The notes: generated by a model not told the origin, from the sequence alone. Positions 2,843 through 63,227 are shown, numbered from the stretch's first letter. The stretch: DNA of 64,000 nucleotides from Ruditapes philippinarum (GCF_026571515.1 NW_026861391.1:372001-436000), one strand, 5' to 3'. A program made the numbers and translations.

Positions 2843-3652
2843 ATGGAAGGTTTATTTTATTCAGTAATTGTCTTCATTTTTCTGGTAAGTATTATCAAAT
2901 TATTTCATGTTATAATTCCGTCAAACTTACAATGACAATCATTTGTTATACTGTTATGCATGCAGAACTTTTAATAAAGGAATGTAACAAATGTGTTTGC
3001 GCTCTCTTTCCCCTTTCTTTCTCTCTCGTTGCCTTAAAAATAAGCAATATAGCATTAGATTTATATAAATCTGCATAAAGTGTGGTTTTTATCTTTTCAG
3101 ACACCAGGGTTAATACACAGCAAAGTCTTACAAGGCTGCTCAGAACCGGAAACTATGCCCACTATGAGTTTTGAGGAAAACTTAAATATAACAATAGAAC
3201 AGTCTTTTAGTATTATCCCTGGCTGGTACGAAACAATCGCAGCTAAAAACGAAGTTCCTTTGGAATATATAGATGTTCACCACAAACATTTCTTCGGACA
3301 TGGCAAATGTAAAAATAATAATAAGAGAAATCGCAAACATAAAAGAGACAACACTCTGAATAATCTTAGTGAATGTATGTGGAGATATATTGAAAACCTA
3401 GACATAAATAGAAAACCTAGCAAACTTCTAGAAGTTGAGTGTATATGCAGCTCTCCACTTAATGCTAGGAGAAATGTTGATTTGATTTGTGAAAGGGTAT
3501 TTGAATATGTATCCGTGTATAGAAGAATTGGGTGCGTCAATGGAGTGTTTGAGTACAAACGCGTATGGGAGCCAAGAGCAGTCGCTTGTGTCGCAACAAC
3601 AATGCCCGAACCTACCCGGCTTCGTACAATGGCTTACAGAATATCAGAATAA
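2843..3652 (+). CDS. IL17: IL-17-like cytokine #1 (exons 2843-2884 and 3101-3652)
   Basis: Exon 1 MEGLFYSVIVFIFL ends at donor CTG|GTAAGT; acceptor TTTTCAG at 3100; the phase-0 join gives a signal peptide. C-terminal SECMW...DINRKP..L.EVECIC...C..V.EYVSVYRR..C.....Y...W...AVAC fits the IL-17 fold. TATATAA at 2701; AATAAA at 3851. Confidence 0.88.
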
Positions 3653-5157
3653 CTTAGGGAATTGACAAAAATGGTTATATATAATAGACTTAGTCATACC
3701 AAAATATCATTATGAACATAGCAGATTTTAAATGCTTCTCCAACTTGATGTAGCTTAGTTATTGAACAATAATAGTACAATTTTAAATCAAAATTAGTGC
3801 AATATAATACATTGTGTTGAAATACTTAATCATATTCATATATGTATGTCAATAAAAATGAAATTTATAACATCTTTGATTTTCTGTGTTACTTGCTTTA
3901 CTTTGCAACTATATCTAGCGATTGAAAGCAAACCATTGCAGATGATTTCTGCCGGCGAGAATTAAACTGTCTAGAAACAATACTATTTTGAACCTTCCAA
4001 CGTTTACATTATAATCTTACTTGTAGAGTAAAACATATCATTATTTGTTTCGGTGTACATTTAATTTTCTAATGCATTGTGCGCTATACATTCTTTCACC
4101 ACATAAAACAAATACGGATATAAACGTCAGTGCAAAGAAATTTCTTTATTGTTTAACTGAAAGTCGTGCTCAACTGATAAAATAAATAGAATCAAAGAAA
4201 AATCAACAAACAAACATAATAACACAAAATAAACAAGAAAAGTAACAACCAAAAGACAAATAATATCAACAACTACAATAAAAACAAAACAGCCAATATT
4301 GAATTGCATTAAAGCTGCTCGTCCAATATAGTTGTTAAGTTTGGTACAGATACATCTATGTAGTTAAACATATGTAACACGATGAACCAAGCTTATACCA
4401 CTTTATAGCCATTGCATGATATTAACTTGAAACATTATTTAATACAACTCTGATACTACAAGTTTTAATGTTTGTTTTCTATGGTTTTAACGGTACATTA
4501 ACACATAAATGGCCATATCGTGCCGAACACTTTAATTATAAACATAAGATTATTAAACCTGAAAAGGGGGTTATTACAACATTTTCACACTAGAAGATCT
4601 TTTATTAAACATGCATACATTTGCATTGTTCGTATTTGTCAATATAAAAAGAACAATATCATTGCTAAATTCCTATTTACATGCTATAATAGTGATAATT
4701 ATCCCTGCTGAATTATAACAGGTTGTTCATTTCACCAATACAGTAAAGATCAAAAGACAATATATTTGTCATTAACGGTAATTAGCAGTGGTAGAGTAGA
4801 CAAGACAATTCTTTTGAAATTTAAACTTCCTTATTGTACATAAATTTGTGCATATTAAAACAGTTATAACCAGTGTTGTAGGTAAATGCTATTTGACGTT
4901 AGTGTAAGTTAACTTAAATGAAAGATTTCATATGCGATGTTCAATGAAAACATCTACTTTTTTACATGTATTGATTTGCTTCTAAAGCACTAGTCTTCAT
5001 CATTACTTTTTTACCATTGAATCACCGAATTTGAAATCTGGAATAGGGATTTAAATGTTGAATTAATTGGTTATTCGTAAAGCTTCTTGATTTGTTGTTA
5101 GAAATTTTGTTTTCTCAAAGTGACATAAAATCTGCGTTGACTATACTTCAGAAAAAG

Positions 5158-5724
5158 ATGCGATTCGGTTTTGCTGTGCTTTTCACCTGTGTGTTTATAC
5201 ATGTATCTTATGCTGACCGAACATTGAGAGTTAAGTGTGATGCAAAGGAAAACATCACTCTGACGGAGCGAATTAATGAACTTCATGAATCGTTTTACAT
5301 GCTGCCATTCTTTAGAAACAGTAATAACTTCATTACTAACGGCTCTGACTTTCACCAAAATGTACACGCTAAAACTGTCCAGCTCGCTAAAAGGAAGAGT
5401 GATCTTTTGTGTAAAACTCAGAAAGGCAAGAAGAGAGGCAATAAACTACGGAGAGCATCAACGTGTCCATGGCATTACGTGTTGAATGTTGACAATCAGA
5501 GAATCCCAACTATATTGTTTGAAGCTCGGTGCAATTGCGCTCATAGATGCCTGGGAGGTATGGCTAACTCTAGATGTGAACCGATTAACTACTACTATCA
5601 CGTGTATAGGAAAGTGGAAGAAGATAAATATGGGTTTTGTACTTATCGTGAAACGTTAGAGGCCATCAGTGTTGGATGTACATGTATTCACCATCCGAAA
5701 GATAGACCCGTCACCTCACTCTAA
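5158..5724 (+). CDS. IL17: IL-17-like cytokine #2 (uninterrupted CDS, 188 aa)
   Basis: ATG 5158 opens signal peptide MRFGFAVLFTCVFIHVSYA; canonical RASTCPWHYVLNVDNQRIPTILFEARCNC...CEPI...ISVGCTC motif. Confidence 0.95.
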   Translation: MRFGFAVLFTCVFIHVSYADRTLRVKCDAKENITLTERINELHESFYMLPFFRNSNNFITNGSDFHQNVHAKTVQLAKRKSDLLCKTQKGKKRGNKLRRASTCPWHYVLNVDNQRIPTILFEARCNCAHRCLGGMANSRCEPINYYYHVYRKVEEDKYGFCTYRETLEAISVGCTCIHHPKDRPVTSL

Positions 5725-5938
5725 TGGAACAGTAATCGCATGTGCATTACTTTTATAAAGTCGATTAAAAAATAAATAATAAAATGCTTAAAGGTTTATT
5801 TATTTCAATAGCAAAAGTGCTAAGTGAAACTCAGTGAAACATTAATGAAAAAATAAACATATTCCAATATAATAGTTTAACTTGAAATGCTATATACCTT
5901 ACTGCTTGAAATATTTTTGAAGTTTTCTATGTCGATTA

Positions 5939-6790
5939 ATTAAAGCAGCACCTCCTCTGATTTGTTACAACTTGCGTGCAAACTAATGAGTAAAACTGTT
6001 GTCTAAAGGATATAGTCCTGGGAATAAGTAATTATATCAGCAAAAACTATCTATATTGTTTGGTTTTATTAACCTGTCAATTACATACTGATTACACGGT
6101 CGATGCACACAGTATATTAATCTTCGGTAGATGTTCGGTAAGTTCCGCGAGATGTACGCTGTACGATGAAATTTAATTTAATTTGTATCTCTAAACTAAA
6201 AGTACTCAGCGTTATAGCGCAATAGGGTAAATCACCAGTTTATAATCTAAGTGCCAAACGTGTTTTAAGTTCGAGGCCGCGTTGGTCCATGTTTTTTTCT
6301 TTTTTATACTTTCAACATTATTGAATCTATATATGATTACTTTATGTTGTTCGTTTTGTTTGATTATGTTTTACTTAATTTTGTTATGTTTATATACTCT
6401 TTCTTTTTTAAATAACATGTTTTTTTTAAGAATTCATGTTTAAAATTAAAACGGATTAAAATCAATAAATGTCTTTTCAATGCCGTAAAACACACTACAA
6501 ATCTGTTCCATTAAAATATACTGCAAAAATAAAGAAAGAGTACTAAAACAATGGCAACAGTCAGGATCGAACCACAGACCTCTCAATTATCAGGCATTCT
6601 CTTTACCGACTGTCCTATTGTGAATTAACGAATACTTTAACATTAAGCTGGCGTGACTTTCAATCCATGACTAATATACTCCACATTAATTCTCGTAAAC
6701 TACACGTACCAAACCGAAGTGGGATCGAATATTTAAATGAGTCCTACAATGTATTCATAATTGACAGGTCAATAAAATCAGACTATACAA
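5939..6790. mobile_element. Non-autonomous inverted-repeat element containing two tRNA-like units
   Basis: TTAAAGCAGCA start; IR TTTTATTAACCTGTCAATTA (6064-6083) / TAATTGACAGGTCAATAAAA (6758-6777); A/B-box units at 6208-6300 (+) and 6545-6622 (-). Confidence 0.5.
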
Positions 6791-17234: not shown

Positions 17235-18057
17235 CTAGTTCTTATGTTCTTTATTTCATGACTGAAGATGGCATTATGGTATGTGTACAAAGTTCAACAC
17301 CTTTACTTTAAAGAAAAGGCGCGTGGGCTTAGCTATTTATACGTGTTGACTGTTAAATTGAAATAAGGTAATAGGAATATTATATTACACCATAATATTC
17401 AGAATAGAAATTATCTCTGAAGTATAGGTTGCTTATAAAAAAAATATTGCGATTGTAAATTTAGAAAATAAATCAAAACATTAATTTTGCAAGTGTTTGT
17501 TGAACCCATTGCTAACGCCAAAATGTATGAACTGAGTTGTCATTGGCAACTACCACTGAGGTTAACAGTAAAAGAATTCATGAAGTTTCTCTCCCTAATT
17601 TGATTGTTTACATAAACGCGTTTTGTAATTTGTAATTTCATTACAAGATGTATCCTGTCATTTGTTAAACCATAGTGAATATTACTTTAACTAAGTAAAA
17701 TGTTTGGTTTAAAAGGCAATTGTATTTAAGGGTATGCATCTGAAAGTGATAATTCTACTTATATCGTAATAATACTTTCTATTTTATGAAATCCTTTTAA
17801 TATGTCCTTGTGTGGAACTGTTTATATTGTGTTTATATTTTCATGACAATTTTATTCTTAGGGAAGTTTAGAAAAAAAATACAAAATTAATGTTATCCTT
17901 TTTATCAATGTTTAACATCCTTATTATTGTAACTTTCAATTCCATTGGTTAAAAACGTTACTCCGAAAACTTCCTGGCCGCTCTAGTCCACACTGCTCTG
18001 ACGCAAGGCTCCTGAGACTGTATTGTCATTTATCAATTCGGTATGCACGCGTACATA

Positions 18058-19364
18058 CAAGGGACGGTCAGAAAATATCCGGACTTTTCATGCTCCTCTC
18101 TTTCCACGTGCAGCAATATACACACAATATATATTGGCAAAAGCCAATAACGTGGTCAGTTTATTTTCAATGATAGTTGTGTATACACAGTATTTTGCCC
18201 TCTGATATATGATAGGTGTTTCGTCTATCATGGACTCTTTGTTAGAGGAACAACGCTCTGTAATAAAGTTTCTGGTTGCAGAAGGTGAAAAGCCCTGCCA
18301 CATCTTTCAGAGGCTTAAAAAAGATTTTCTGATAAATGTGTATCACGTTCAGCCTTCTACAACTGGGTTTCTCAGTTTCGTGAAGGCAGAATAAGTGTTT
18401 GTGACAAGCCTAGGACTGGGCGGCCAGCTGAGGCGGTGACCCCAAAAATGGTAGCAAATGTTAAAGCTTTTGTCAACAAAAATCGTCGGGTAACTTTGGA
18501 GGAGGAAGCCAACAAGTTTAGCATCGGTTAGGCATCGGCACACAAGATTTTACACGAACACCTAGGCATGAGCAAGGTAAGTGCCAGGTGGGTGCCTAGA
18601 CAGCTGTCCGCAGATCAAAAGACAACCAGAGTAACCAATGCAAAAGAACATTAAAGTCGTTTTAACGTGAAGGAGAAGTTTTTGAACCGCATTATCACTG
18701 GAGATGAGATGTGGGTTCATTATTCCGAACCTGATACAAAAGCTCAGTCAAAGCAGTGGAAACGAGCTGGTTCCCCACCTCCTAAAAAGTTTAAGCTGTC
18801 TCCTTCGGCTGGCAAAGTAATGCTTGTTGCCTTTTGGGATTCACGAGGAATGATACTTACTCATTTCATGCCAAAAGGTCAAACTGTCACCGCCAAGTAC
18901 TATTCTGAAGTAATTCTGAAAAAATCTCAGAGAAAAGCTGAAGCAAATGCGTCCCAGGTTAGCACAGAAAAATGTCATCCTTCTTCACGACAACGCCCCC
19001 TCCCATACCGCCGCAGCTACAGTGGAGGTTATCAACTCTTACAAATGGCAATTGTTGTCTCACCCTCCTTAAAGCACAGACCTCACCCCCTGTGACTTTT
19101 ATTTGTTTCCAGAACTGAAAAAAATTGCTTGCTGGAAAGAAATATAAGAACAGGGCGGCTTTGATATCTGCTGTTACACAGTACCTAAAACATAGGTCTA
19201 CGTCATGGTTCACAGCGGGAATACAAAAGCTCCCACGAAGATGGCAAAAGTGCGTAGACGTAGGTGGAGAATATTTTGAAAAAGAGTAGAAAGATTATTT
19301 TTTTTAATGTTGAATGGTTTACGAGAATGAGTCAAAAGTCCGGATATTTTCTGACTGCCCCTCG
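18058..19364 (+). mobile_element. Full-length (~1.3 kb) mariner DNA transposon, defective
   Basis: 31-bp TIRs CAAGGGACGGTCAGAAAATATCCGGACTTTT and CGAGGGGCAGTCAGAAAATATCCGGACTTTT (3 mismatches), flanked by TA at 18056-57 and 19365-66. The TACGAGGG terminus suggests the irritans-type group. Confidence 0.95.
18230..19289 (+). pseudogene. Mariner DD34D-type transposase pseudogene
   Basis: MDSLLEEQRSVIKFL...WVPRQL...ITGDEMWVH...LLHDNAPSH...HPP*STDLTPCDFYLF...GGEYFEKE*, broken by several stops and frameshifts. Confidence 0.93.
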
Positions 19365-21519: not shown

Positions 21520-22520
21520 CTAGTTCTCTGAAACTACTCTTGTGTTTGGAGACTCGGTGTCCTTTTTAGGTAAAACAGGTGTACATCCAATGGCAACAGT
21601 TTCATAAGTTCTTTCATAAAGAAAGCCGTTTCTTTCGTCACAAATTGTATTTCCATTTTCGTCATATTTCTGTTTTAAAACTTTGTATCTGTACGGTATT
21701 TCTGTACACTGAGGTGTCAGTAAGTTTTCTGCTCGTTTACTTTTACACATTTTTCTGCATTTCCTGCTACGGCTCTCCTCTTTACAGTTACATTTCCTTC
21801 GTTTCGATTGTAAATACCGAACTTTACTGCATGTACATTTAGCTGTGTTAATGATTGGAGGGTATCTGTTTGGATCGTGACTTAAAAGAAAGTAATACGG
21901 ACATAATGACCTGTCGTTTAGATTATCGCTATTATGTTTCAAAGTCCGTGAACACCTTCGATTTCCAAACGAGTGTGTTAAATTACCCCTCATTTCTCTA
22001 GCGTGTTTGTCCTGCAAACCAATCTTTTTGAAGATGCTGGGTAGTAACTGGAAAGAAGGGTGGATTGAATTTTCACCTAACCACTCTATGTATTGTTCGC
22101 GTAGATTTCTCGGAAGGGTCGAGTCATTGTTACATGAATGTGCAAATGTCAACTCCACGAATACTAGACCCTGAAAACAAAAGGGAAAAAACATTGAAAA
22201 TAATAAAAATCAAATTATTTCTAAAGCAGTTATAAAGTGAAAAAGAGAAATACAATTAATAATCATTGTGATCATATTTAGTTTTACAAATGTAAACAAG
22301 TTTGATAATGAATTTCAGAATAACCAGTTCTTTTATTAAAAAAGCACCTCAAACCAATTATATATTTGCATTTTAATTATGATAATGGAAAAAATCGTGC
22401 AGGTTTATGGGCTTACATTTAGTGACCATATTTATTGAAAATTATTATTTTGTTATTAAAAAGTTTGCAATAAATATCATGGAAAAAGTAGCATACCATA
22501 AACACTAGTGACCACAACAT
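21520..22520 (-). CDS. IL17: IL-17-like cytokine #3 with basic Cys-rich insertion (exons 22520-22497 and 22170-21520)
   Basis: Exon 1 MLWSLVFM|GTATGC, acceptor GTTTTCAG, phase 0, giving MLWSLVFMGLVFVELTFA-HSC. Motif DRSLCPY....HDPNRYP..I.TAKCTC...C..I.Y...VL...ETVAIGCT. The same exon structure is conserved in paralog #4. Confidence 0.9.
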
Positions 22521-27134: not shown

Positions 27135-28562
27135 TCTAGCTATCTTACACCTAGGGACAAAACATTCCGTTTATCTATATTACATTCAGGGACAAAGCAT
27201 TCTGTTTATTTATCTTACATGCAGGGTCAAAGAATTCTGTTTATCTATCATACATGCAGGGACAAAGCATTCTGTTTATCTTTTTTACATGCAGGGACAA
27301 ATCATTCTGTTTATATATCTTACATACAGGAACACAACATTCTGTTAATCTATCTTACATGCAGGGACAAAGCATTCTGTTTATCTATATTACATTCAGG
27401 GACAAAGCATTTGGTTTATTTATCATACATGCAGGGTCAAAGAATTCTGTTTATCTATTTTACATGCAGGGACAAATCATTCTGTTTATATATCTTACAT
27501 ACAGGAACACAACATTCTGTTAATCTATCTTACATGCAGGGACAAAGCATTCTGTTTATCTATTTTACATGCAGGGACAAATCATTCTGTTTATATATCT
27601 TACATACAGGAACACAACATTCTGTTAATCTATCTTACATGCAGGGACAAAGCATTCTGTTTATCTATATTACATTCAGGGACAAAGCATTCTGTTTATT
27701 TATCTTACATGCAGGGTCAAAGAATTCTGTTTATCTATTTTACATGCAGGGACAAAGCATTCTGTTTATCTATATTACATTCAGGGACAAATCATTCTGT
27801 TTATCTATCTAACATGCAGGGACAAAGCATTCTGTTTATCTATTTTACATGCAGGGACAAATCATTCTGTTTATATATCTTACACACAGAAACACAGCAT
27901 TCTGTTTATCTATTTTACATGCAGGGACAAAGCATTCAGATTATCTGTTTTACATGCAGGGACAAAGCATTCTGTTTATCTATCTGACATGCAGGGACAA
28001 AGCATTCTATTTGTCTATCTGACATGCATGGATAAAGCATTCTGTTTACCTCTCTTACGTGCAGGGACAAAGCATTCTGTAACATGCAGGGACAAAGCAT
28101 TCTGATTATCTATATAACATGCAGGGAAAAATCATTCTGTTTATTTTTCTTACATGCAGGGACAAAGCATTCAGTTTATCTATCTTACATGCAGGGCCAA
28201 ATCATTTTGTTTATATATCTTACATGCAGGGACAAATAAAATTCAGTTTATCTATCTTTCATGCAGGGACAAAGTACTTTGGTCATCTATATTACATGCA
28301 GGGACAAAGCATTCTGTTTATCTATCTTACATGCAGGGACAAAGCATTCAGTTTATCTATCTTACATGCAGGGACAAACCATTCTGTTTATATATCTTAC
28401 ATGCAGGGACAAAGCCTTCAGTTTATCTATCTTACATGCAGGGACAAAGCTTTCTGTCTATATATCTTACATGAAGGGACAAATCATTCTGTTCATATAT
28501 CTGACATGCTGGGACAAATAAAATTCAGTTTATCTATCTTTTATGCAGGGACAAAGTACTTT
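27135..28562. repeat. 35-bp minisatellite, ~41 units (ACATGCAGGGACAAAGCATTCTGTTTATCTATYTT)
   Basis: Directly visible tandem units without spacers; variant units recur at multiples of 35 bp. Confidence 0.97.
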
Positions 28563-28726: not shown

Positions 28727-28749
28727 TGTGTTTTATTTATTTCGTCTTA

Positions 28750-29217: not shown

Positions 29218-29376
29218 TTTTACATGCAGGGACAAAGCATTTTGATTATCTATTTTACATGCAGGACAAAGCATTCAGTTTGTCTGTCTTACATCAAGGG
29301 ACAAAGCATTCTGATTATCTATTTTATATGCAGGGACAAAGCATTCAGTTTATCTATCTGACATGCAGGGACAAAG
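29218..29376. repeat. Continuation of the 35-bp minisatellite (~4.5 units) after a ~650-bp interruption
   Basis: Same unit sequence as 27135-28562. Confidence 0.93.
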
Positions 29377-31212: not shown

Positions 31213-32217
31213 CTAGTTCTCTGAAACTACTCTCGTGTTTGGAGACTCGGTGTCCTTTTTAGGTAAAACAGGTGTACATCCAATGGCAACAGTTTCATAG
31301 GTTCTTTCATAAAGAAAGCTGTTTCTTTCGTCACAAATTGTATTTCCATTTTCGTCATATTTCTGTTTTAACACCTTGTATCTGTACGGTATTTCTGTAC
31401 ACTGAGGTGTCAATAACTTTTCTGCTCGTTTACTATTACACGTTCTTCTGCATTTCCTACTATGGCTCTTCCCTTTACAATTACATTTCCTTCGATTCGA
31501 TTGTAAATACCGAACTTTACTGCATGTACATTTAGCTGTGTTAATGATTGGAGGGTATCTGTTTAGATCGTGACTTAAAAGAAAGTGATACGGACATAAT
31601 GACCTGTCGTTTAGATTATCGCTATTATGTTTCAAAGTCCGTGAACACCTTCGATTTCCAAACGAGTGTGTTAAATTACCCCTCATTTCTCTAGCGTGTT
31701 TGTCCTGCAAACCAATCTGTTTGAAGATGCCGGGTAGTAACTGGAAAGAAGGATGGATTGCAGTTTCAGCTAACCACTCTATGTATTGTTCGCGTAGATT
31801 TCTCGGAAGGGTCGAGTCATTGTTACATGAATGTGCAAATATCAACTTCACGAATACTAGACCCTGAAAACAAAAGGAAAAAAATCATTGAAAATAAGAA
31901 GAATATAAAATCAAGCTATTTTTATAGTAGTTTTGTAGTGAAAAGATGATCATTGATTTATATTCAATGTTAAGTAAAACTAAACAAATGTGATAATGAG
32001 CTTCAAAATAGCCCGTTCTTTTATTAGAAAAAAAACATTTAAAAATGATTTACATGAAAGCACTACCAATCCGTTATATATTTGCATGTTAAATTATGGT
32101 CTTTGTGTGCTTACAATTTGTGAACATATTAATTGACAAATATTATTTTGTTATTATAAAGATGTAATAAATATCTGAATAAAAATATCATACCATAAAC
32201 ACTAGTGGCCACAGCAT
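31213..32217 (-). CDS. IL17: IL-17-like cytokine #4, recent paralog of #3 (exons 32217-32194 and 31863-31213)
   Basis: Exon 1 MLWPLVFM|GTATGA; exon 2 is 651 nt, the same length as in #3; 16 aa differences from #3 in the mature protein. Confidence 0.9.
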
Positions 32218-35200
32218 ATTTTTGTTTTAATTTTCGCATTAATTGATAACCTTGGTTGCTTTTCGTTTGAACACAGTGATGTTATATCGGTTACTTTTAT
32301 GCGTATTTATGACGGGATTCGACGATTTTCCAAATTTCGGACGAAATTACACATGCTTATTCATAAAAAAATACCATAGTAATGTCGCAATATTCATATA
32401 CATTCGTATAGTAAACATGTTCCGTTGAAATATTAAGAATGTCAAGGGGCATTCACCTGGTTTCTGACTTGTTTGATATCGCGATAATTTGATAAATACA
32501 TGTTTTATTGGTGTTAAGGAAACTATGTCGTTCATCACTCACTTAAATATAACGACACATTTTAATAGTATAATGTAGGCGTTCCCAATCATGAATTCAT
32601 TAACTAATGTGCGATCGTGTGGGCAAATAAATGAGCAAATGATGTGAATAAGGAAAACAAATCTGAAATTGTGTGCAGAATACGTTTTATGTTTGTTTTT
32701 AAACCGATTGACTAACTAGTTCGTACGAAATATCAATCTAATTGAGTTAAATAATGTTTAATGTAACAATGTAGTAAATAATCATAAACCTTGACCGTTT
32801 CATAATTCAAAAAACGAAAGTGTTTTCTTTGGTAATTTTGGATAATACAGATAAGATATCATTAAGGATTACATAACATGTAGAATCTAGTTAATTATAC
32901 ATAGATAAATCTACTCTTGGCGGATGTTAGCTTTAGTGTTACAGAGTTTAAAAAGACCTGCCAGAAAAAAGCCCAAATACATGTATATGATTTTAGAATA
33001 GCGCGTATATAGAAGCGATGAAATATACCCAAAAGAAAGAGAAAACATACAAGCAAAGAAGTGAAGGAAACACGTGAAGTCACCATGAAAATAGTACAGT
33101 AAGGTAATTTCTTTAGGACATTACAAAATATAATTTTAATCAGCCTCCTTAATTAAGCACTGTGATAAGTCGATTGTAAGTGTACACCGTTACCAGCATA
33201 TATAATTATAATTAGTTGTTCATTTATTTGTGACTCAGCACTTGAACTAATATTATTCTGTTTTCCTCTGTGTGTGTGTGTTTTTTTTTTAAATAAGTTT
33301 TGATAATGTTTAAATATCTTCTCTGACAACATGTCGAATAATCTATGTTCATCATTGCATATTTCTTAAGGCATAGTATGTATGTGTGCCATATGAGATT
33401 AACTTTTTAACTGAAATGTATTTCTTTCATTCAGATATTGTATTCAGACTGTGGTATTCGTCATAATACGTCATTGATGGTGAACTTTTAGTTTTTGATA
33501 ATTGTTATTGGTGTTCAAAAAGTGTGTGTTTAACCGTGTCAGGCACACTTTGCAGTTTAAAGGTTTGAATTTATGTGACTCATCGGTTGATCTACAAAGT
33601 AGTTGTATGTGGAAACAATGAAAGACGTGCAGCAAGGCTAACTGTAGCATATTTTTGATTGACTGGCTAAAGTAAAATTATAAAGATAATATCATGATCT
33701 GCGGACATTGTTAATGGTGCTGGTTGAATGACAAGCGTTGTTTGGACTTTTTTGTTTTGGGTCCTCCACTGGCTCTTGTTACTGGGTCGGGTGGGGGCTG
33801 CGTTCATTGAACGCCGCCTTTCCTTGATGATCTTGTTTATCATATATTATATTTCAAATAAATGTTTGATATAAATTCAAAAAAATGTTTAATCTAAGAT
33901 ATAAATAAAACACTGGGTATATACTTTGGAAAAGAGATATCCATGCAATATATTTTAACTTTCTACTTGTTGACCTTAATACTATTTTACTGTTTAGGTC
34001 AAAACCAAAGGAACAAAACATTTTAGTAAAATTACATCTGTTATAGATAAAGTAAATGGGACATTAGAAAATTGATTAAGATATAAAATATATTGTTTAA
34101 ATTACACATTAACTGTTTTCCTTTGTTGTTTGCTTTTTTACAATACATGAAATAAATAGATCAAAGAAAATATACTTGATGATAGTATATTCATAAATAA
34201 AGTTTCTACATGTTTATTTTAAACATAATTTAAGAATGACAATTTAATAGAGATAACCGCCATAGGGAGAAATAGAGAGTGAGCCCAGTAGTAAATAAAT
34301 TCATTCACATAATTGCCGTGTTTTTATCTTTCATTTAATTCAATAACATATTTGAACAAGATCTCATACGATTCGTTAATCGGAAGGAAGTTAATTTCGG
34401 GTTATACTGCATCGATTACATTAAAATACCGTGTTTGAATTCCCCGTTTTTTTATGGATTCATTAAGTTCCGACATGGGTTATCTTAAATATGAGCAAAG
34501 GATTAGAAACATTAAATGATATGAATTGCACCACTTTGATTCAACATGAAACGGAGTCTATTTAAAAGTTTGGTATGTATGCATTTGTCTTAGAAACATT
34601 ATCTTACAGACGAAAGTTTTGGAAACGAAACAATTAAAATCATAATTGACTCTTTCAATGTTTTCAATTTTCAGAATGTCAGTTCAATTTCTTTTTTAGG
34701 GAGTTTTAGTTTTGTTTTACAGATTAACGTAAAAAAATGCAAATGTCACAGATATATAACATCAGGGTATAAATGTGATGTACGCGTTCCTGATCAGATG
34801 CCATACAGAAAGCTTTTGTCAGAAATTAGTTTACTTTTTATCGCTTGATGTTTTAACTCATTTATCTCTCTTTATAAATGAACACAATGAATATAAAGAG
34901 TTAATTACAAAAGGTTAAGGAAACTATTGTCATATTTTAAATATATCTAAAAAAGAACAATTGCTAGTTTACGTAAACGTTTTTATTACTTTAAATTTTC
35001 TAAAAAAAAAAATTAAATAAATCTTAACAGGAAACAATCAGTTCTGGATGGAATAAGAGATTTTTAAATTTGGAGTAGAATGAACGATGGATGAATTAAT
35101 TCGTTAAGGTTTATTCTCAACATCATTTTAAAACTTATTTTTAAATTATATGTCACAGCCTAGGATGGATTACAGACTAAGGGGATAAATATGTGTCGTA

Positions 35201-35750: not shown

Positions 35751-36356
35751 GTCTTAGCTTTAGCAGGAACCGGAATAGTGTTTGCAGAATGCATCGAGCC
35801 AGAAAACGCTGAAGAAATCAAACTCAACCTACAAAAGATAATTAAAGACACGTATCTGAACTATATGTCATTTTTCAATATCAAGAGCAACTTAGACAGG
35901 GTAAAAAGCCAGCTAAACGACACGGATAACTCTACTATTACAACAGATTTCAACCACCGAAGATCACAAACATACATTAGTAGGTTATATGGAGAGCCTA
36001 AATGTAAATCAAGACTACGATTTAGAGCACATGAAAACCACTCATCTAATGAAATATCATCATGTCCATGGTATCATATAATAGAATTTGACAGTGATAG
36101 GATTCCGTTAACTTTACTTAAAGCACGTTGCACGTGTGTAAACTGCCTCGTGCCAATGAGAAACGGGTACAGACGAGATCGAAACGCTACTAGTGGTTCC
36201 TGTAAGGAAGTTAGTTACCATATGCCTGTTATACGAAGACATTGTGTTGGTGGTGAGTTTCAGTATCGTATTGCTATAGAAAACATTCCTGTTGGGTGCA
36301 CATGTCAAAGGTGTAACCGAAATAAGAAACAAGGAAAGACGACAGCACAAATATGA
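35751..36356 (+). CDS. IL17: IL-17-like cytokine #5, main exon (first exon unresolved)
   Basis: Acceptor TTTCTTGAAG at 35750, then VLALAGTGIVFA-EC (end of a signal peptide); ISSCPWY....DSDRIP..L.KARCTCVNC...CKEV.Y..PVIRR.C...IPVGCTC. Confidence 0.9.
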   Translation, partial: VLALAGTGIVFAECIEPENAEEIKLNLQKIIKDTYLNYMSFFNIKSNLDRVKSQLNDTDNSTITTDFNHRRSQTYISRLYGEPKCKSRLRFRAHENHSSNEISSCPWYHIIEFDSDRIPLTLLKARCTCVNCLVPMRNGYRRDRNATSGSCKEVSYHMPVIRRHCVGGEFQYRIAIENIPVGCTCQRCNRNKKQGKTTAQI

Positions 36357-40494: not shown

Positions 40495-40636
40495 NNNNNN
40501 NNNNNNNNNNNNNNNNNNNNNNNNNNNNNNNNNNNNNNNNNNNNNNNNNNNNNNNNNNNNNNNNNNNNNNNNNNNNNNNNNNNNNNNNNNNNNNNNNNNN
40601 NNNNNNNNNNNNNNNNNNNNNNNNNNNNNNNNNNNN
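40495..40636. other. Assembly gap (142 N)
   Basis: Run of N. Confidence 1.
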
Positions 40637-43732: not shown

Positions 43733-44516
43733 CTAAACTTCCAAAGCTCTTTTGCAAGTACATCCAACTGGCACTTCTTCAATGCCTTTGAAATATCTGT
43801 AGTATTTAGCATTGCTTGGACATTCCCATTTTATGACTGGTACATATGTGTTAACAGTGGCACACCGTCCTTTACCACGTGCACTACCTCCAACAGAATG
43901 ACATCTATTACAAGAACACTTTGCTTTTGCCATTGTTCTAGGTTCCCTGTTTAAATCAACATCCATAACAACGTACCACGGACAAGTTGATGCTGACCCT
44001 AAATTCTTTTGTGTAACACGTCTGTGCCTTCTACATTTAGCTTGTCCATATAATCGACTTTGAAATTTGGTATATTTGTCCACCATAAAATAATCTCTAT
44101 GTTGGTATCCTTTTGTGTTTTCACGATACTCTTTAATAACATTGTAGGTCCATCGACCTAAATAAAAGTCATGGAATATTTGTCTACGAAGAGCTGTCCT
44201 ATTTTCCACAGAATGAACACAGTGTGCGTTAATGGAATAACTAAAATATATGTTAACGAGGAGCACTGTCAAAACCTGCAAAAAAGAGAAAAAGATAAGT
44301 AAAGAACAATATTGGGGTACTGTAGTTGAAATGTAATAAAATAGAGTTATTACGTCACATGGTTCATGATAAGAAGAAGACATTTGTAAATAATAAAAAA
44401 ACAACAATACATTCACTAAAGATAAACGATTATACTAGTTACTAGAATAGATATATTTAATATTATATGATGCTATTAATAAATGCACCTACTTGGTGTA
44501 ATGATAATCTATTCAT
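43733..44516 (-). CDS. IL17: IL-17-like cytokine #6 (exons 44516-44493 and 44275-43733)
   Basis: Exon 1 MNRLSLHQ|GTAGGT, acceptor TTTTTGCAG, phase 0 into VLTVLLVNIYFSYSINA-HC; ASTCPWY...D.DLNREP..MAKAKCSCNRC...VPVGCTC; minus-strand TATA at ~44612-44620. Confidence 0.92.
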
Positions 44517-45420
44517 CTTTTTCATTACTTTACAAAATATTGTTTAAGTTCTTTTATAGTGTTTTACTTGTTATGAGTACTTGAGCAATAAGTTCAACTT
44601 TAAAAGATAAATTTATATATATACCTTCAAGATAGTACGTTTAAATCCCAGATGCTAGGGGATTTTTTGTTCTTGTTATATTGAACACGTGAATGTCCGA
44701 AAAAAGCTCCTTACTCTTCTTCCGTTTAGTTCCGCTGTTCCGGTACTCGATTTCTTCCAATCACAATGCACACAACAGTTCGTTATCAACGTTTATGGAT
44801 AGATTCGCTTATAACACATTTAATAGGGTAGAGAAATTTTGAACTAACCCTATCAATACACACATCAGATTTTTCTGTACCTCTTAATCGGTTCACGTGA
44901 TTTCCTTTTCAGACTTAGTGTGTGTACATGATTGGCGCAGTGGATAAGAAGGGAATATTTCCATATCAAATCAATTTTAAAATCGACGATAAACATTAAA
45001 TATGTCAGTTTACAGTTTAATGTTTACAAGGTCATTGCTTTGTAAATATACGCACGCAGTAGGAAGAAAGTAAATTGTTCAATAGCGAATACTCTTTTAT
45101 CTTGTGCATATGTTGTTGATACGCCGTATTCTATGAATATCTAATAACATTTAAAACATTTCAGACTTAGCCAAACGTAATGCATATTTAACAACATTAG
45201 AGTTAAAAGGATTTATCTCTTTATCAAACCAGGTAACATGTACAGGTAGACTTCACGCCAGTGAAGTAGACTTTATATGGTTAAGCTATAAAAGAGATTC
45301 TAGTTGAACCAATTGATTGAAATAAAATCCTAAAAACTCGTGACTTTAAAAATGCCCAACCCGTACTTATAACTGTTTGTACAGAAATGCAAGAAAGTTA
45401 TTATGAAATTTTAACAATTT

Positions 45421-46183
45421 AAACAAGAGCTGTCGGTAGGACAGCAACGCTCGACTATTCTTAGTGCTTGATAGTAAAAAAAATGCTTGATAGAGTTACC
45501 TCCTCCTGTTTACAGGTTGGGGTCATGATGGTGAACAAGTGTGCAAAGTTTCAAAGCCATATGTCAATGGACTTTGAAAATATTTGAACTATTACAAAAA
45601 CTTTAACGTAAATTCTAAGTCGAAAAAGGGGCATAATTCTGTCAAAATGCTTGATAGAGTTACCTCCTCCTGTTTACAGGTTGGGGTCATGATGGTGAAC
45701 AAGTGTGCAAAGTTTCAAAGCCATATGTCAATGGACTTTGAAAATATTTGAACTATTACAAAAACTTTAACGTAAATTCTAAGTCGAAAAAGGGGCATAA
45801 TTCTGTCAAAATGCTTGATAGAGTTACCTCCTCCTGTTTACAGGTTGGGGTCATGATTTTGAACAAGTGTGCAAAGTTTCAAAGCCATATGTCAATGGAC
45901 TTTGAAAATATTTGAACTATTACAAAAACTTTAACGTAAATTCTAAGTCGAAAAAGGGGCATAATTCTGTCAAAATGCTTGATAGAGTTACCTCCTCCTG
46001 TCTACAAGTCGGGGTCATGATGGTGAACAAGTGTGCAAAGTTTCAAAGCCATATGTCTATGGACTTTGAAAATATTTGAACTATTACAAAAACTTTAACA
46101 TAAGTGGTTACGCCGACGCCGACGCCGACGCTCGGGTGACTGCAATAGCTCTACTTATTCTTATCGAATAGTCGAGCTAAAAA
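45421..46183 (-). mobile_element. Helentron-associated non-autonomous element (HINE/pearl-like) with internal 164-bp tandem repeats
   Basis: Sub-terminal IR GCTCGACTATTC (45449) / GAATAGTCGAGC (46166), terminal hairpin GCTGTC-ggtag-GACAGC, (GACGCC)n microsatellite, T-run ends, ~3.7 copies of a 164-bp unit (starts 45483, 45647, 45811, 45975). Confidence 0.8.
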
Positions 46184-56608: not shown

Positions 56609-56667
56609 GGGAATTTCGGACTTAGTTCAGTCAGAGAGGACGTCCGGCTTAAGAGGTTAGTATAAAA
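56609..56667 (+). promoter_or_regulatory. Proximal promoter of IL-17 #7: kB-like site, GGACGTCC palindrome, TATA
   Basis: GGGAATTTCGGAC (56609), GAGGACGTCCGG (56636), TATAAAA (56661); conserved at #8. Confidence 0.7.
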
Positions 56668-56716
56668 TATTTCAAGAATTATAAGCTTAAAGCAATTTGT
56701 TAACTAAACTGACAAG

Positions 56717-57610
56717 ATGTACATAATAAAGGTATTTTAGTTTGATGAAATGGAGAACAGTTTCAAAGTTCTTAAACAGTTACAACTCTTTTTTGAAAAA
56801 TTGTTAATCATACGTATTTGTAGTTTACATTTTTTTCAAAGACATATGTATCTAAATTTTACTGCACTGCCTAAGCCGGTACTAGGGGTGCAGACGGTTA
56901 CTAGCTCTTAAAAGAACCGTTTAGAAACTGACTTAATCAAACCGCATCCGGTCTCTTTTTCCTTCTTGTCTTTTGGATGTTTTAAAGCATTTTGTTTCTA
57001 TTTTTACAATCAATGTTTAACTGAATGTTATTATTACTTCTTTCAGTTTATCGTTGTTTTGTTGGCGGTAAAACAGTTCAAACAAACTTCAGCGTGTAGA
57101 GAGCCAAAGAACATAAATATAGAACTAGCTCGTGCATTTTATGACCTTTACACAGATGACAGATTTAGTAACTTCTCGTTAAATATAGTACCTTGTTTGT
57201 CGTCTAGCAAAATCATCAAGAATACTCATAAACAAACTGGAAGCAATGAACACACGCGAAAGTCATCCGGCAAATGCGTTATTCCTGAAAATGGAGGAAA
57301 TGTCATAACTGACAGTGAGCGTAATCATGGAGAGATGTGTCCCTGGAATTATGTTATAGATTTTGACGAGAATAGATTCCCTAAAAGATTGGCAAAAGCC
57401 GTTTGCCAGTGCGAGCATTGTCATAGGGGATCGTGTCGCCCTATACATTCATATATTCCAATTTTAAGGAAAGAGTGTGATTTATATTCTGGTCAATATG
57501 TGTTTAACAAGTATATAGAGGAAGTGCCTGTTGGTTGTCGATGTACTCGCGCTAGAACAACATCGCAAGAAAATATTTTTAGACATCGTTTGTACAGGAT
57601 ACAAGAGTAA
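56717..57610 (+). CDS. IL17: IL-17-like cytokine #7 (exons 56717-56731 and 57047-57610)
   Basis: Exon 1 MYIIK|GTATTT, acceptor TTTCAG at 57046; MCPWNYVIDFDENRFPKRLAKAVCQCEHC...CRPI...VPVGCRC; TATAAAA at 56661. Confidence 0.92.
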
Positions 57611-58791
57611 GCTACCACCCGAGGAGAAGCAATATTAACAGTTTGTTTGTTTATTTGTTACGTTAAATAATGTGTATAGTGTTTATCCTGCTCTAGTCTT
57701 AAAATTGTGCTACAATTCCATCTTTTTACTCGATTTATTTGTAATGTCAACACTTTTGTTATCTTTATTTTGTAATTATATCTCTTTACGTTCCATTTTA
57801 CAAATATACAAAGGAATAAAGAATGTTAAGCAAATATCAAAATTAGTGTTTATTTGATTATATGTAATCATTGCATTGCATGATGTTCAAACTCGGTTCA
57901 AGGGTCTATTCATTAGAAAAAACTGAAAGGTACAATATCTCTTAAGCCCCTTTGCACCTGCTTAAGCAATATTCAATCTTCCAAAGAATTGTAATCAATT
58001 ATCTCAAAAGACCGGATAAAGATATATGATAAGCATCGAAATGACTTAAGTGAAAAGTTTTTAAAGCTTTCAAACTTGTTCATATTATTTCAACGTGGTC
58101 TCAATTAAACAATATCTAATTTTGAAACAAAGGTTATTTTGGTAATTTTAAAAGTAAAAATCTATAAAAACAAACAATAAGCTATCCTTAATCTGCTGAA
58201 TGCATTAAACAACTTGTGAAACTCCCATGTTTTGACGTGTCAAAGATGGAAATATGTTGGTCATTTAGCCAATAGCCTGGTCAGATACTACGATTTTGCA
58301 AGCTTGTATGACTCTTTACAGGAGACAAATTATTATAAAGGACGCTTTATAAGATTAAGGATTAACATTTGTTCTTTATATCTTATTTATGGCATCAGTT
58401 TAAACACATTCACTTGGAAAGCTAGGAAATTCTATTTCGATCAAAAACAATCAGTACAAAAACATTTCTAAGGTCGGATGACTCCGATTTTTATACCTAG
58501 TAAGAAATACAATTTCATTACAACAATTAAAACACTTTCCTTTTTTAGATGTTTCAAAGCAAGGAGTAGCATTTTTATGTTGAAACTAAAAGGACCAATA
58601 ATACATGTAAATACATGTAAATCAAAGCTGGAATCAATGGCTATGAAAATCAATGACTGTGAAACAATGATATTTAAATTCAAACTTAAATGTTTTAGGA
58701 TCGGTAAAATTTCCGCATCACAAACATGTTTATATATGTCTGATTATGTGTATATATTTATACACTGTTAAAATAGAGAAAAACAGAGTCC

Positions 58792-58982
58792 TTAAAGAAA
58801 GCCCAACACGGCAAAATTGAAAAAGTTTGGTTTGATTGAGCCTGTTCATGGACGGTACTGGAAAGTGCAAGTTACCTTCCACGACCCATATCACCGACTT
58901 AAGCAGAATTCACCATTTAAACACGAAAATGGTGAAATTTTGAATTCAGAAACATCCGCCAAATAAAAGAATGCGTGTGACC
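58792..58982 (-). repeat. Multi-hairpin dispersed element, copy E
   Basis: TTAAAGAAAGCCCAACACGGCAAAATTG...TTTGATTGAGCCTGTTCATGGACGGTACTGGAAAGTGCAAG...AAACATCCGC. Confidence 0.85.
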
Positions 58983-61900: not shown

Positions 61901-62385
61901 CTGCCAATATGAGTGCATGTTTTATACTCCAACGAAAACTGAACTGTTCTTTTTTAATCTAACATTGTGCAGCTTTGCAATTAACTTAAAAAACATAAGT
62001 ATATTTGGCCAAGTTACGTCAACAATACTCACAGTATACTGTCACAAATACTGTCACAGTTTACAGGACAGCAGTGGGGCACCACCTAGAAAATTCAAAT
62101 AAGCGAAAGTGTCAAATCTTTAAGTGCAATGTTCGTCTCCTATTAGGTTATCTGTCTTAAATCAAAATGTGAAACTAATATCAAACTAATAATTCACACA
62201 CCATTGACTAGGGTGGGGCTGAAATGAAAACGATGTAACATTTTGATTCGTTTTTACTTTTGGGACAAGATCAACGTAATGATAATGTTTAGCACTCATC
62301 GTAAGTGGTGGAATGCGCTGAAGCATTTAGAGAAATGATTATTATTTTTGAGTATAGCTTACAATAAAGCACTGACGTCTGTGTC

Positions 62386-62444
62386 GGGAATTCTGGACAT
62401 TTGTACAGAAGTGAGGACGTCCGGTTCCTAGGTGAGTATATATA
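62386..62444 (+). promoter_or_regulatory. Proximal promoter of IL-17 #8
   Basis: GGGAATTCTGGAC (62386), GAGGACGTCCGG (62413), TATATATA (62437). Confidence 0.7.
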
Positions 62445-62523
62445 CACACATCATGGTGTCATTGTATGTCCAGATTAATTAAGATAATTTCTAGATAGAA
62501 ACTGTCACTGAGTACCAAAGAAA

Positions 62524-63227
62524 ATGTTTTTGATAAAGGTAAATATCTTTTCTTAATATCTAACTTTATTATGCATTAATGTAATTAAGATATTTCTCGG
62601 TTTATGATTGTATTTGTTAATATTTTTAAATAGTTTATGTTTCTTTTTTTATTTCAGTGGTCTTTGATTATCATTGCGTTTGGAATGTCTCAAGAAACAG
62701 CTATATTTGCATGTAGAGAGCCTGATAATCTACACCTTGAGGTTGCCAATGCCCTTCTCGGCCTTTATACAGACGATGGATTTAGAAACTTTTCACTTAA
62801 TACAATACCATGCTTGAAATCAAATGACATTATTAGGAATATCCCCGAACACTATGACAACAGGGAACAAAGCCATATACCTACCGGCACATGTGTTATT
62901 CCTGAAAATGGAGGAAATGTCATAACTGACAGTGAGCGTAATCATGGGGAAATGTGTCCCTGGAATTATGTTATAGATTTTGACGAGAATAGATACCCTA
63001 AAAGACTGGCAAAAGCCGTGTGTCAGTGCGAGCATTGTCATAGGGGATCGTGTCGCCCTATACATTCATATATTCCAATTTTAAGGAAAGAGTGTGATTT
63101 GTATTCTGGTCAATATGTGTTTAACAAGTATATAGAAGAAGTGCCTGTTGGTTGTCGATGTATTCGTGCAAGGAGGGCAGTTCAAGGAAACGTGTTCAGA
63201 CATCGTTTATTCAGAATGATGGAGTAA
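62524..63227 (+). CDS. IL17: IL-17-like cytokine #8, paralog of #7 (exons 62524-62538 and 62658-63227)
   Basis: Exon 1 MFLIK|GTAAAT, acceptor ATTTCAG at 62657; knot domain almost identical to #7; TATATATA at 62437; AATAAA at ~63408. Confidence 0.92.

What the first reader, a model, noticed from the sequence alone, without database searches (positions are those of the whole stretch)
2843..63227. Eight-gene IL-17 cytokine cluster holding highly divergent subtypes
Seen: eight secreted cystine-knot ORFs in 61 kb with no other host gene between them, in mixed orientation. They fall into very different types (#1; #2; #3/#4; #5/#6; #7/#8). All share a Cys just after the signal peptide and a second Cys (mostly G-x(0-3)-C) before the CPW-type motif; the basic set is 10 Cys. 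Established: IL-17 is expanded in molluscs, and invertebrate IL-17s keep knot cysteines that are Ser in vertebrates. Inference: a birth-and-death immune locus, possibly extending beyond the window and able to form heterodimers.
Basis: partly seen in the sequence, partly recalled or inferred. Interest (0 to 1): 0.8.

Follow-up and report, generated by a model that had tools for sequence, protein, structure and literature searches.

The report
Manila clam IL-17 cytokine gene cluster
The window holds eight real, intact interleukin-17-type cytokine genes that form the middle of a 16-gene tandem cluster in the Manila clam genome, a good example of the IL-17 expansions already described in bivalves rather than a new kind of thing.

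Summary
All eight ORFs pass Pfam's IL17 gathering score. A profile of the cluster hits solved IL-17F, IL-17A and IL-25 at about E 1e-13, against 6e-3 for PTTH. AlphaFold models of the two oddest members match only IL-17 structures.

The genome is Ruditapes philippinarum: #5 is 100% identical to an NCBI "interleukin 17-like protein", and #4 is an NCBI "uncharacterized protein". The same contig carries 16 intact IL-17 ORFs in 138 kb, about 44% of the genome's IL-17 hits. They fall into seven lineages that are 15-35% identical to each other, with closer orthologues in other clams.

Seven of the eight genes share a phase-0 intron inside the signal peptide. The intron of #1 is confirmed by a spliced transcript contig. 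The N gap lies in intergenic DNA and touches no gene.

Duplicates range from recent (#3/#4, dS 0.06) to ancient. Two pairs carry sharp gene-conversion tracts. No pseudogene was found.

Tandem mixed-isoform IL-17 arrays of two-exon genes are already published for bivalves, octopus and sea urchin (PMC8353272). This is therefore a new member of a known kind. Immune induction and heterodimers remain untested. Earlier scan notes on this window cover only sub-features of these genes.

The parts
2843..2884 (+). IL-17 #1, exon 1 (14 codons, start of the signal peptide)
   Evidence: ATG followed by a GTAAGT donor. A spliced contig in run X2 joins 2883/4 to 3100/1 with GT..AG ends.
3101..3652 (+). IL-17 #1, exon 2. 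Lineage A: 8 Cys, CMW motif, lacks two knot Cys.
   Evidence: Pfam IL17 26.3 bits. The AlphaFold model matches only IL-17 chains. A contig in run X1 covers 3094-3792.
5158..5724 (+). IL-17 #2. Single coding exon from an in-frame ATG with its own hydrophobic leader. Lineage C, 10 Cys.
   Evidence: Pfam IL17 53.1 bits. No acceptor site lies in the ORF. Contigs from run X2 cover 4840-5952 colinearly.
21520..22170 (-). IL-17 #3, exon 2. Lineage B, with a Cys-rich basic insertion in the knot; 12 Cys.
   Evidence: Pfam IL17 33.6 bits in two stretches. Phase-0 acceptor at 22170. The model matches IL-17 chains.
22497..22520 (-). IL-17 #3, exon 1 (8 codons), inferred
   Evidence: Homologous to the annotated exon 1 of #4, with one residue different.
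31213..31863 (-). IL-17 #4, exon 2. A recent duplicate of #3: 92% aa identity, dS 0.06.
   Evidence: Pfam IL17 35.3 bits. Equals NCBI protein P0006, 'uncharacterized protein LOC132715485'. Lies in a 2.2-kb duplication at 85.7% identity.
32194..32217 (-). IL-17 #4, exon 1 (8 codons)
   Evidence: Matches the N-terminus of P0006.
34546..34572 (+). IL-17 #5, exon 1 (9 codons)
   Evidence: Matches the N-terminus of NCBI protein P0001.
35751..36356 (+). IL-17 #5, exon 2. Lineage D, 11 Cys.
   Evidence: Pfam IL17 55 bits. 100% identical to 'interleukin 17-like protein [Ruditapes philippinarum]', with a 70-72% orthologue in Mercenaria.
40495..40636 (.). Assembly gap (142 N) in the convergent intergenic space between #5 and #6
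   Evidence: No IL-17 ORF touches it, its flanks are unique, and it is the only gap in 224 kb. It was not filled.
43733..44275 (-). IL-17 #6, exon 2. Lineage E, 10 Cys. Exon 1 is uncertain; the candidate is 44493-44525.
   Evidence: Pfam IL17 55.5 bits. Phase-0 acceptor at 44275. Candidate exon 1.
56717..56731 (+). IL-17 #7, candidate exon 1 (5 codons), inferred
   Evidence: ATG, four more codons, then a GT donor; parallels the candidate exon 1 of #8.
57047..57610 (+). IL-17 #7, exon 2. Lineage F, 11 Cys.
   Evidence: Pfam IL17 55.4 bits. Phase-0 acceptor at 57047.
57275..57544 (+). Gene-conversion tract shared by #7 and #8 (partner at 62892-63161)
   Evidence: 261 of 270 nt are identical, including third codon positions. 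The 5' flank is about 57% identical, and on the 3' side identity falls within two windows to chance level.
62524..62538 (+). IL-17 #8, candidate exon 1 (5 codons), inferred
   Evidence: ATG, four more codons, then a GTAAAT donor, 119 nt upstream of the acceptor.
62658..63227 (+). IL-17 #8, exon 2. Lineage F, 11 Cys.
   Evidence: Pfam IL17 56.4 bits. Phase-0 acceptor at 62658.
18655..19092 (+). Mariner-type transposase remnant, the only non-IL-17 coding signal found between the genes
   Evidence: Pfam Transposase_1, E 3e-19.
27140..28556 (.). 35-bp minisatellite (about 41 copies) between #3 and #4
   Evidence: Tandem Repeats Finder. It is the source of the spurious IclR_C and NDNF_N Pfam hits.

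Best explanation
The window is the central part of a tandem cluster of interleukin-17 family genes in the Manila clam, Ruditapes philippinarum. The cluster has 16 intact genes in about 138 kb, eight of them in the window, and they belong to seven old lineages.

Shown: each gene encodes a pre-protein of about 190-225 aa. It has a hydrophobic leader, a poorly conserved N-terminal part and a C-terminal IL-17 cystine-knot domain. That domain keeps the extra knot cysteine pair (CPW and its partner) that vertebrates replaced by serines. Most genes have two exons with a phase-0 intron inside the signal peptide.

Shown or strongly inferred: the locus grew by repeated local duplication and inversion over a long time. 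The youngest event is the 2.2-kb #3/#4 duplication. The lineages are older than the split between clam genera. Short gene-conversion tracts have re-homogenised the knot core in at least two pairs.

Inferred from the family, not tested here: the proteins are secreted as dimers and bind IL-17 receptors that carry a SEFIR domain; such loci exist in this genome. They would then signal through a CIKS/Act1-TRAF6-NF-kB type route as early inflammatory and mucosal cytokines, with the lineages differing in receptor preference, tissue or stimulus.
For: - Family identity: Pfam IL17 is above its cut-off for all eight genes, and no competing family appears.
- Rival families: the cluster profile hits IL-17F, IL-17A and IL-25 chains at E 1e-13 to 2e-12, against PTTH at 5.7e-3.
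- Cysteine framework: the alignment places the clam CPW Cys on the vertebrate SPW Ser and the clam 'grC' Cys on the second vertebrate Ser.
- Fold: the AlphaFold models of #1 and #3 match IL-17 structures only.
- Public annotation: #5 equals an NCBI 'interleukin 17-like protein' of R. philippinarum, and #4 equals a RefSeq model.
- Cluster size: 16 intact ORFs on one contig and no further fragments.
- Lineages: seven well-supported clades, with cross-species orthologues nested inside four of them; identity matrix.
- Gene structure: shared intron position and a spliced transcript contig for #1.
- Selection: dN/dS is about 0.2 in the knot domains of the older pairs.
- Duplication and conversion.
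- Receptor side: SEFIR-domain loci are present in the genome.
- Literature: the published pattern in bivalves is the same, namely tandem arrays mixing isoforms, two-exon genes, 6-8 Cys in the domain and the CPW motif (PMC8353272).
Against: - No functional or induction data exist for these particular genes.
- Two raw-read RNA-seq runs, sampled at 4-6%, showed no reads on the exons of #1 or #2.
- The Vibrio-induced clam 'IL-17D' from the literature maps to other contigs, not to this cluster.
- #1 barely passes the Pfam cut-off, and #1, #3 and #4 lack two of the canonical knot cysteines.
- The structure models are only moderately confident (pLDDT 63-68).
- Exon 1 of #6, #7 and #8 is inferred, and no signal-peptide predictor was available.
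- The order of genes across the N gap rests on the assembly alone.
Confidence: 0.9

Rival explanations
1. The proteins belong to, or work like, another cystine-knot ligand family (PTTH/trunk, Spaetzle, noggin, NGF-like) rather than IL-17.
For: PTTH appears as a very weak hit, E 5.7e-3 and 20 bits, to the cluster profile. #1 passes the IL17 cut-off by only 2 bits.
Against: No such family appears in Pfam even at E<=1 for any of the eight genes. IL-17 chains score about 35 bits higher than PTTH. The top 50 structural matches of both models are all IL-17A, IL-17F or IL-25 entries. The CPW/SPW motif and the C-terminal GCTC align to IL-17F.
Confidence: 0.02
2. Part of the copy number is an assembly artefact: alleles or haplotigs laid in tandem, or a wrong join at the N gap. 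The true cluster would then be smaller or split.
For: The assembly is fragmented (15,874 contigs). Other IL-17 copies on different contigs are nearly identical to each other, which suggests haplotigs elsewhere. There is one gap inside the cluster. #3 and #4 differ by only dS 0.06.
Against: Fourteen of the 16 genes are under 80% identical to any other copy. Around #3/#4 the non-coding DNA is only 85.7% identical with indels, the copies lie 9.7 kb apart in gap-free sequence, and a minisatellite lies between them. IL-17 genes lie on both sides of the gap. What appears to be a single 13.8-kb contig from another clam (same longest-contig length for both proteins; the contig could not be fetched) carries orthologues of both #5 and #3/#4.
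Confidence: 0.05
3. The genes are true IL-17 family members, but some lineages are not inflammatory cytokines. They could act as antagonists or decoys, or in development or neuromodulation. This applies most to the lineages that lost a canonical knot disulfide (#1) or gained an insertion (#3/#4).
For: The lineages are very divergent, and cysteines were lost in pairs. No reads fell on #1 or #2 in two RNA-seq samples. The one challenge-induced clam IL-17 in the literature lies outside this cluster. IL-17 signalling outside immunity is known in other invertebrates (own knowledge, not checked here).
Against: Purifying selection on the knot domain fits any ligand function and does not discriminate between these options. 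Published bivalve and sea-urchin data tie expanded IL-17 sets to mucosal immune responses (PMC8353272). There is no positive evidence for another role.
Confidence: 0.15

Closest known systems
Tandem IL-17 arrays of marine invertebrates (Mytilus galloprovincialis, Mizuhopecten yessoensis, Octopus bimaculoides, Strongylocentrotus purpuratus; Saco et al. 2021, PMC8353272)
   Same: Many IL-17 genes lie side by side on one scaffold, mixing the same and different isoforms. Two exons is the commonest structure. The domain holds 6-8 Cys with a CPW motif. The repertoire is about 30-plus genes per genome, and some isoforms have fewer cysteines.
   Different: The species (a venerid clam) was not in that survey. 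Here 16 genes of seven lineages sit in 138 kb with no recognisable gene between the eight genes in the window (the outside intervals were only spot-checked). Conversion tracts and a conserved signal-peptide intron position are documented here. I did not find these points in the papers I read.
Vertebrate IL-17A/IL-17F (solved structures such as 1jpy, 3jvf, 4hsa)
   Same: Same Pfam domain and same predicted fold. The conserved D-x-x-R-x-P segment, the C-terminal GCTC and the position of the SPW/CPW motif all align. In vertebrates the neighbouring paralogues IL17A and IL17F form heterodimers.
   Different: Sequence identity is only about 15-24%. The clam proteins keep the third knot disulfide that vertebrates lost and add further cysteines (10 in the basic set). 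They have a longer, unconserved N-terminal part. Receptor pairing is unknown.
PTTH/trunk cystine-knot ligands (for example 5aoq)
   Same: A distantly similar cystine-knot core; the match is weak (20 bits).
   Different: They score about 35 bits below IL-17 chains, give no Pfam hit, and do not appear among the structural matches.

Membership tests
IL-17 family (Pfam PF06083) | The sequence matches the IL17 profile above the curated gathering score. | tested here: met
   All eight genes score 26.3-56.4 bits against a cut-off of 24. The genome scan finds 13 of the 16 cluster genes above the cut-off.
IL-17 family (Pfam PF06083) | IL-17 is the best-matching cystine-knot family, ahead of PTTH/trunk, Spaetzle and noggin. 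| tested here: met
   Pfam shows no other knot family at E<=1. Against PDB sequences, IL-17F, IL-17A and IL-25 score 51-55 bits and PTTH 20 bits.
IL-17 family (Pfam PF06083) | Knot cysteine framework: Cys (invertebrates) or Ser at the (C/S)PW motif, C-x-C after strand 2, and the C-terminal G-C-x-C. | tested here: met
   The framework is fully present in #2, #5, #6, #7 and #8. #1, #3 and #4 each lack the same two positions, the Cys after C-x-C and the last Cys. Those three meet it only in modified form.
IL-17 family (Pfam PF06083) | IL-17 fold: two long beta-hairpins on a cystine knot. | tested here: met
   The models of #1 (pLDDT 63) and #3 (pLDDT 68) have four long strands. Every Foldseek match listed (ranks 1-50) is an IL-17A, IL-17F or IL-25 entry, with probability 1.00 and TM 0.46-0.70 on the target. 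Model confidence is moderate.
IL-17 family (Pfam PF06083) | Secreted protein with an N-terminal signal peptide. | tested here: inconclusive
   Hydrophobic leaders are present in all the gene models. Three models are supported, by RNA (#1) or by NCBI models (#4, #5); the others are inferred. No signal-peptide predictor was available.
IL-17 family (Pfam PF06083) | Acts as a homo- or heterodimer. | not testable with these tools
   No multimer prediction and no experiment were possible. The cysteines outside the knot are conserved but their pairing is unknown.
IL-17 family (Pfam PF06083) | A cognate receptor with a SEFIR domain is present in the same genome. | tested here: met
   Two SEFIR (PF08357) loci lie above the cut-off, at E 3e-24 and 7e-12; this is a lower bound. 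Binding was not tested.
IL-17 family (Pfam PF06083) | Induced by immune challenge. | not tested
   Only presence in transcript contigs was shown, for #1 (spliced) and #2. The published Vibrio-induced clam IL-17D maps to other contigs.
Invertebrate tandem IL-17 array (as in PMC8353272) | Several IL-17 genes adjacent on one scaffold, mixing the same and different isoforms. | tested here: met
   There are 16 genes of 7 lineages, interleaved along the contig in the order A B B A C A C B B D E F F E E G.
Invertebrate tandem IL-17 array (as in PMC8353272) | Predominantly two-exon genes. | tested here: met
   Seven of the eight genes have a phase-0 acceptor 12-20 codons before the first Cys. #2 has a single coding exon.
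Birth-and-death evolution of a gene family | Duplicates of very different ages, with orthologues closer than paralogues. | tested here: met
   dS runs from 0.06 (#3/#4) to saturation. #5 is 70-72% identical to its Mercenaria orthologue but at most 30% identical to any paralogue.
Birth-and-death evolution of a gene family | Pseudogenes or gene remnants in the array. | tested here: not met
   tblastn with all 16 proteins finds nothing outside the 16 intact ORFs in 224 kb at E<=0.01. Two hits with an internal TGA exist on other contigs.
Birth-and-death evolution of a gene family | Little or no concerted evolution (gene conversion). | tested here: not met
   #7/#8 share a 270-nt tract at 96.7% identity inside a gene that is otherwise about 57% identical. 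For x353/x360, dS is 0.14 in the knot against 2.6 in the N-terminal part.

The most novel reading that the evidence does not exclude
The most novel reading still open is that this is one of the largest contiguous mixed-lineage IL-17 loci in a lophotrochozoan. Seven ancient lineages would be kept together across venerid clams because neighbours are co-regulated and pair as heterodimers, while gene conversion repeatedly resets the receptor-binding knot core and the N-terminal parts diverge freely. Two lineages have also independently swapped which two of the three knot disulfides they keep, which would define a structural IL-17 variant not seen in vertebrates.
Probability: 0.15. Interest if true: 0.5.

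Novelty: new member of a known kind. Interest (0 to 1): 0.25.

Why it matters
The locus gives a clean, fully intact map of an IL-17 supercluster in a commercially important clam: 16 genes, seven lineages, exon structures and conversion tracts. That map can be used to design lineage-specific expression assays in disease work (Vibrio, Perkinsus). It can also be used to test whether neighbouring invertebrate IL-17 genes are co-expressed and form heterodimers. It does not change the current picture of IL-17 evolution, because expansion by tandem duplication in marine bivalves is already established.

Tried and rejected
- Other knot families (PTTH, Spaetzle, noggin) were rejected on Pfam and PDB scores.
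- Apparent IclR_C and NDNF_N domains between #3 and #4 were rejected as translations of a 35-bp minisatellite.
- ORFs that span the N gap (40387-40719 and 40479-40775) are artefacts of translating N.
- I looked for extra IL-17 fragments or pseudogenes in 224 kb and found none.
- I tried to link the cluster to the published Vibrio-induced clam IL-17D through its qPCR primer. The primer maps to contigs C3775, C9033 and C9892, a different clade.
- A word-based homologue search with the 16-gene profile returned only nine proteins, so no broad mollusc phylogeny could be built.
- The exhaustive representative search was deliberately not run, because the operators reserve it for open proteins and these are not open.
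The NCBI gene table around the locus and the 13.8-kb foreign contig could therefore not be read.
- Joined (spliced) protein models were not typed or searched; exon 2 segments were used on their own.
- The N gap was not filled.
- The ten longest flank ORFs gave only a reverse-transcriptase fragment in Pfam.

Full report
**What is there**

The window is AT-rich (about 31% G+C). All eight match Pfam IL17 (PF06083) above its gathering score: #1 scores 26.3 bits, #3 33.6, #4 35.3 and the other five 53-56, against a cut-off of 24. No other cystine-knot family appears even at E<=1.

A profile of the cluster proteins was searched against all PDB sequences. It hits IL-17F, IL-17A and IL-25 at E 1e-13 to 2e-12, and PTTH only at 5.7e-3.

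I modelled the two least typical members, #1 (the weakest Pfam score) and #3 (which carries an insertion). The models have moderate confidence (pLDDT 63 and 68). All 50 top Foldseek matches in the PDB are IL-17A, IL-17F or IL-25 entries.

**Organism and public status**

#5 is 100% identical over its main exon to the NCBI protein 'interleukin 17-like protein [Ruditapes philippinarum]'. It has a 70-72% orthologue in Mercenaria mercenaria. #4 equals the NCBI model 'uncharacterized protein LOC132715485'. The window is contig C9878:372001-436000 of a 1.41-Gb assembly. At least two of the eight genes are therefore already in RefSeq, one of them under the right name.

**Extent of the cluster**

The whole-genome Pfam scan and my own six-frame HMM scan of contig positions 282-506 kb find 16 IL-17 ORFs between 338.6 and 476.5 kb. 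Five lie to the left of the window, eight inside it and three to the right. tblastn with all 16 proteins finds no additional fragment or pseudogene in those 224 kb.

Genome-wide there are about 36 hits: the 33 plus three cluster genes that its first look missed. About 44% of the repertoire therefore sits in 0.01% of the genome. Some copies on other contigs are near-identical to each other and may be haplotigs.

**Lineages**

A maximum-likelihood tree and the identity matrix resolve seven well-supported lineages:
- A: x338, #1, x366
- B: x353, x360, #3, #4
- C: x370, #2
- D: #5
- E: #6, x438, x447
- F: #7, #8
- G: x475

Identity between lineages is 15-35%. Cross-species orthologues nest inside lineages A, B, D and E, so the lineages predate the divergence of these clams.

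Along the contig the lineages are interleaved, in the order A B B A C A C B B D E F F E E G, with mixed orientation. This fits block duplications and inversions, but that is inference.

**Gene structure and expression**

Seven of the eight genes have a strong phase-0 splice acceptor 12-20 codons before the first conserved Cys. Short upstream exons were found for most of them:
- #1: 2843-2884
- #3: 22497-22520
- #4: 32194-32217, which equals the NCBI model
- #5: 34546-34572, which equals the NCBI model
- #7: 56717-56731 (candidate)
- #8: 62524-62538 (candidate)
- #6: uncertain

#2 has its own ATG and leader in one exon.

A contig from public run X2 carries the GT..AG joint 2883/4->3100/1, which is exactly the predicted intron of #1. 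Contigs also cover exon 2 plus the 3' UTR of #1, and all of #2. Two raw-read RNA-seq runs, sampled at 4-6%, had no reads on these exons. Expression is therefore real but low or conditional in those samples.

**Cysteines**

The first Cys after the leader is invariant in all 16 genes. The second precedes the knot and usually follows a Gly.

The HMM alignment to IL-17F places the clam CPW Cys on the vertebrate SPW Ser. It places a second clam Cys on the other vertebrate Ser, as the literature states for invertebrate IL-17 (PMC8353272).

**Between the genes, and the gap**

I scanned 142 intergenic stop-to-stop ORFs of at least 58 aa against Pfam. The only real hit is a mariner transposase remnant at 18655-19092. 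The IclR_C and NDNF_N hits are translations of a 35-bp minisatellite at 27140-28556.

The assembly gap at 40495-40636 lies in the convergent spacer between #5 and #6. It has unique flanks and is the only gap in the 224 kb. It breaks no reading frame of interest. The adjacency of the two sides rests on the assembly alone.

**How the locus evolves**

#3 and #4 sit in a 2.2-kb direct duplication at 85.7% identity, 9.7 kb apart. Their coding dS is 0.06 and dN 0.037, and the amino-acid changes are concentrated in the inserted segment.

Older pairs have saturated synonymous divergence, with dN/dS near 0.2 in the knot domain.

Two pairs are mosaics. In #7/#8 a 270-nt tract (57275-57544 against 62892-63161) is 96.7% identical, third codon positions included. 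Its 5' flank is about 57% identical, and on the 3' side identity falls over 60 nt (about 63%) to chance level past the stop codon. That is gene conversion rather than mere purifying selection. In x353/x360, dS is 0.14 in the knot half against 2.6 in the N-terminal half.

The locus therefore shows births of many ages and some concerted evolution, with no detectable deaths in this stretch.

**Mechanism**

By homology, the products should be secreted dimeric cytokines that bind SEFIR-domain IL-17 receptors. At least two SEFIR loci are present in the genome. This step, the immune role and the proposed heterodimers are all inferred, not shown. The only challenge-induced clam IL-17 in the literature I could read (PMC4234419) maps, through its primer, to a different clade on other contigs.

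**Comparison with what is known**

Saco et al. 2021 (PMC8353272) describe the following:
- IL-17 repertoires of more than 30 genes in marine bivalves and octopus
- tandem arrays that mix the same and different isoforms on one scaffold
- two exons as the commonest gene structure
- 6-8 Cys in the domain, with some isoforms reduced to four
- the CPW motif

The present locus fits that description point by point, in a species not covered there. I found no paper on an IL-17 cluster in this clam, or on gene conversion in mollusc IL-17.

**Verdict**

It is a new member of a known kind and of modest interest. Earlier scan notes on this window (s1-803806, s1-804185, s1-804323, s1-804631) concern sub-features of the same genes. 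My tests agree with them where I checked.

Noticed in passing
window 57275-57544 and 62892-63161: A sharp 270-nt tract is 96.7% identical between #7 and #8, third codon positions included, inside genes that are otherwise about 57% identical. This is a gene-conversion tract covering the knot core.
   Followed up: yes
L038:1474-2103 and L038:8162-8827 (contig 353.5 and 360.2 kb): A second mosaic pair lies outside the window. Synonymous divergence is 0.14 in the knot half and about 2.6 in the N-terminal half.
   Followed up: partly
window 3430-3600 (#1); 21520-21800 (#3); 31213-31500 (#4): The same two cysteines are missing together in lineage A (#1, x338, x366 and a foreign orthologue) and in #3/#4 with their foreign orthologue: the Cys three residues after C-x-C, and the last Cys of G-C-x-C. 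The sister genes x353 and x360 keep both. This looks like two independent paired losses. By alignment to IL-17F the lost pair corresponds to one of the two knot disulfides that vertebrates keep, while the vertebrate-lost pair is retained.
   Followed up: partly
window 21718-21822 and 31411-31515: #3 and #4 carry a basic insertion of about 35 residues with four extra Cys between strands 2 and 3. It is modelled as a low-confidence helix. The foreign orthologue P0009 has an insertion at the same place with only two Cys. Most #3/#4 amino-acid differences fall in this segment.
   Followed up: partly
window 27140-28556 and 29218-29376: A 35-bp minisatellite of about 41 copies stays open in several reading frames. 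It produces spurious above-threshold Pfam hits (IclR_C, NDNF_N).
   Followed up: yes
window 17900-19100: A mariner-type transposase remnant (Transposase_1 plus HTH pieces) lies in a locally G+C-richer stretch (39%).
   Followed up: partly
window 45480-46103: A 164-bp tandem repeat (3.8 copies, 98% identical) lies 1-1.7 kb upstream of #6. Each copy holds a short ATG...GT donor-like unit.
   Followed up: no
window 6018-6400: A segment with very high depth in all four runs (over 100x in raw RNA reads). Many reads run off unlike at 6052-6054 and at 6394. It is probably a transcribed dispersed repeat.
   Followed up: no
G000 contigs C3775:16623, C9033:175119 and 184747, C9892:76968: The forward qPCR primer of the published Vibrio-induced Manila clam 'IL-17D' (PMC4234419) matches these IL-17 copies with 2 mismatches. 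They form a separate clade from the cluster studied here.
   Followed up: yes
L013/L016, L015/L018, L020/L021/L022/L025: IL-17 copies on different contigs (C8199 against C14002; C9033 against C3775 and C9892) are nearly identical. They may be haplotigs, so the genome-wide count of about 36 is probably inflated.
   Followed up: no
L032:2670-3653(+) and L033:4660-5553(-) (contig 294.7 and 306.7 kb): Two long open frames (328 and 298 codons) encode Ser/Pro/Gln-rich, probably disordered sequence with no Pfam match. The second ends in a C-x2-C...H-x3-C zinc-finger-like motif. They are probably exons of ordinary genes that mark the left edge of the IL-17 cluster.
   Followed up: no
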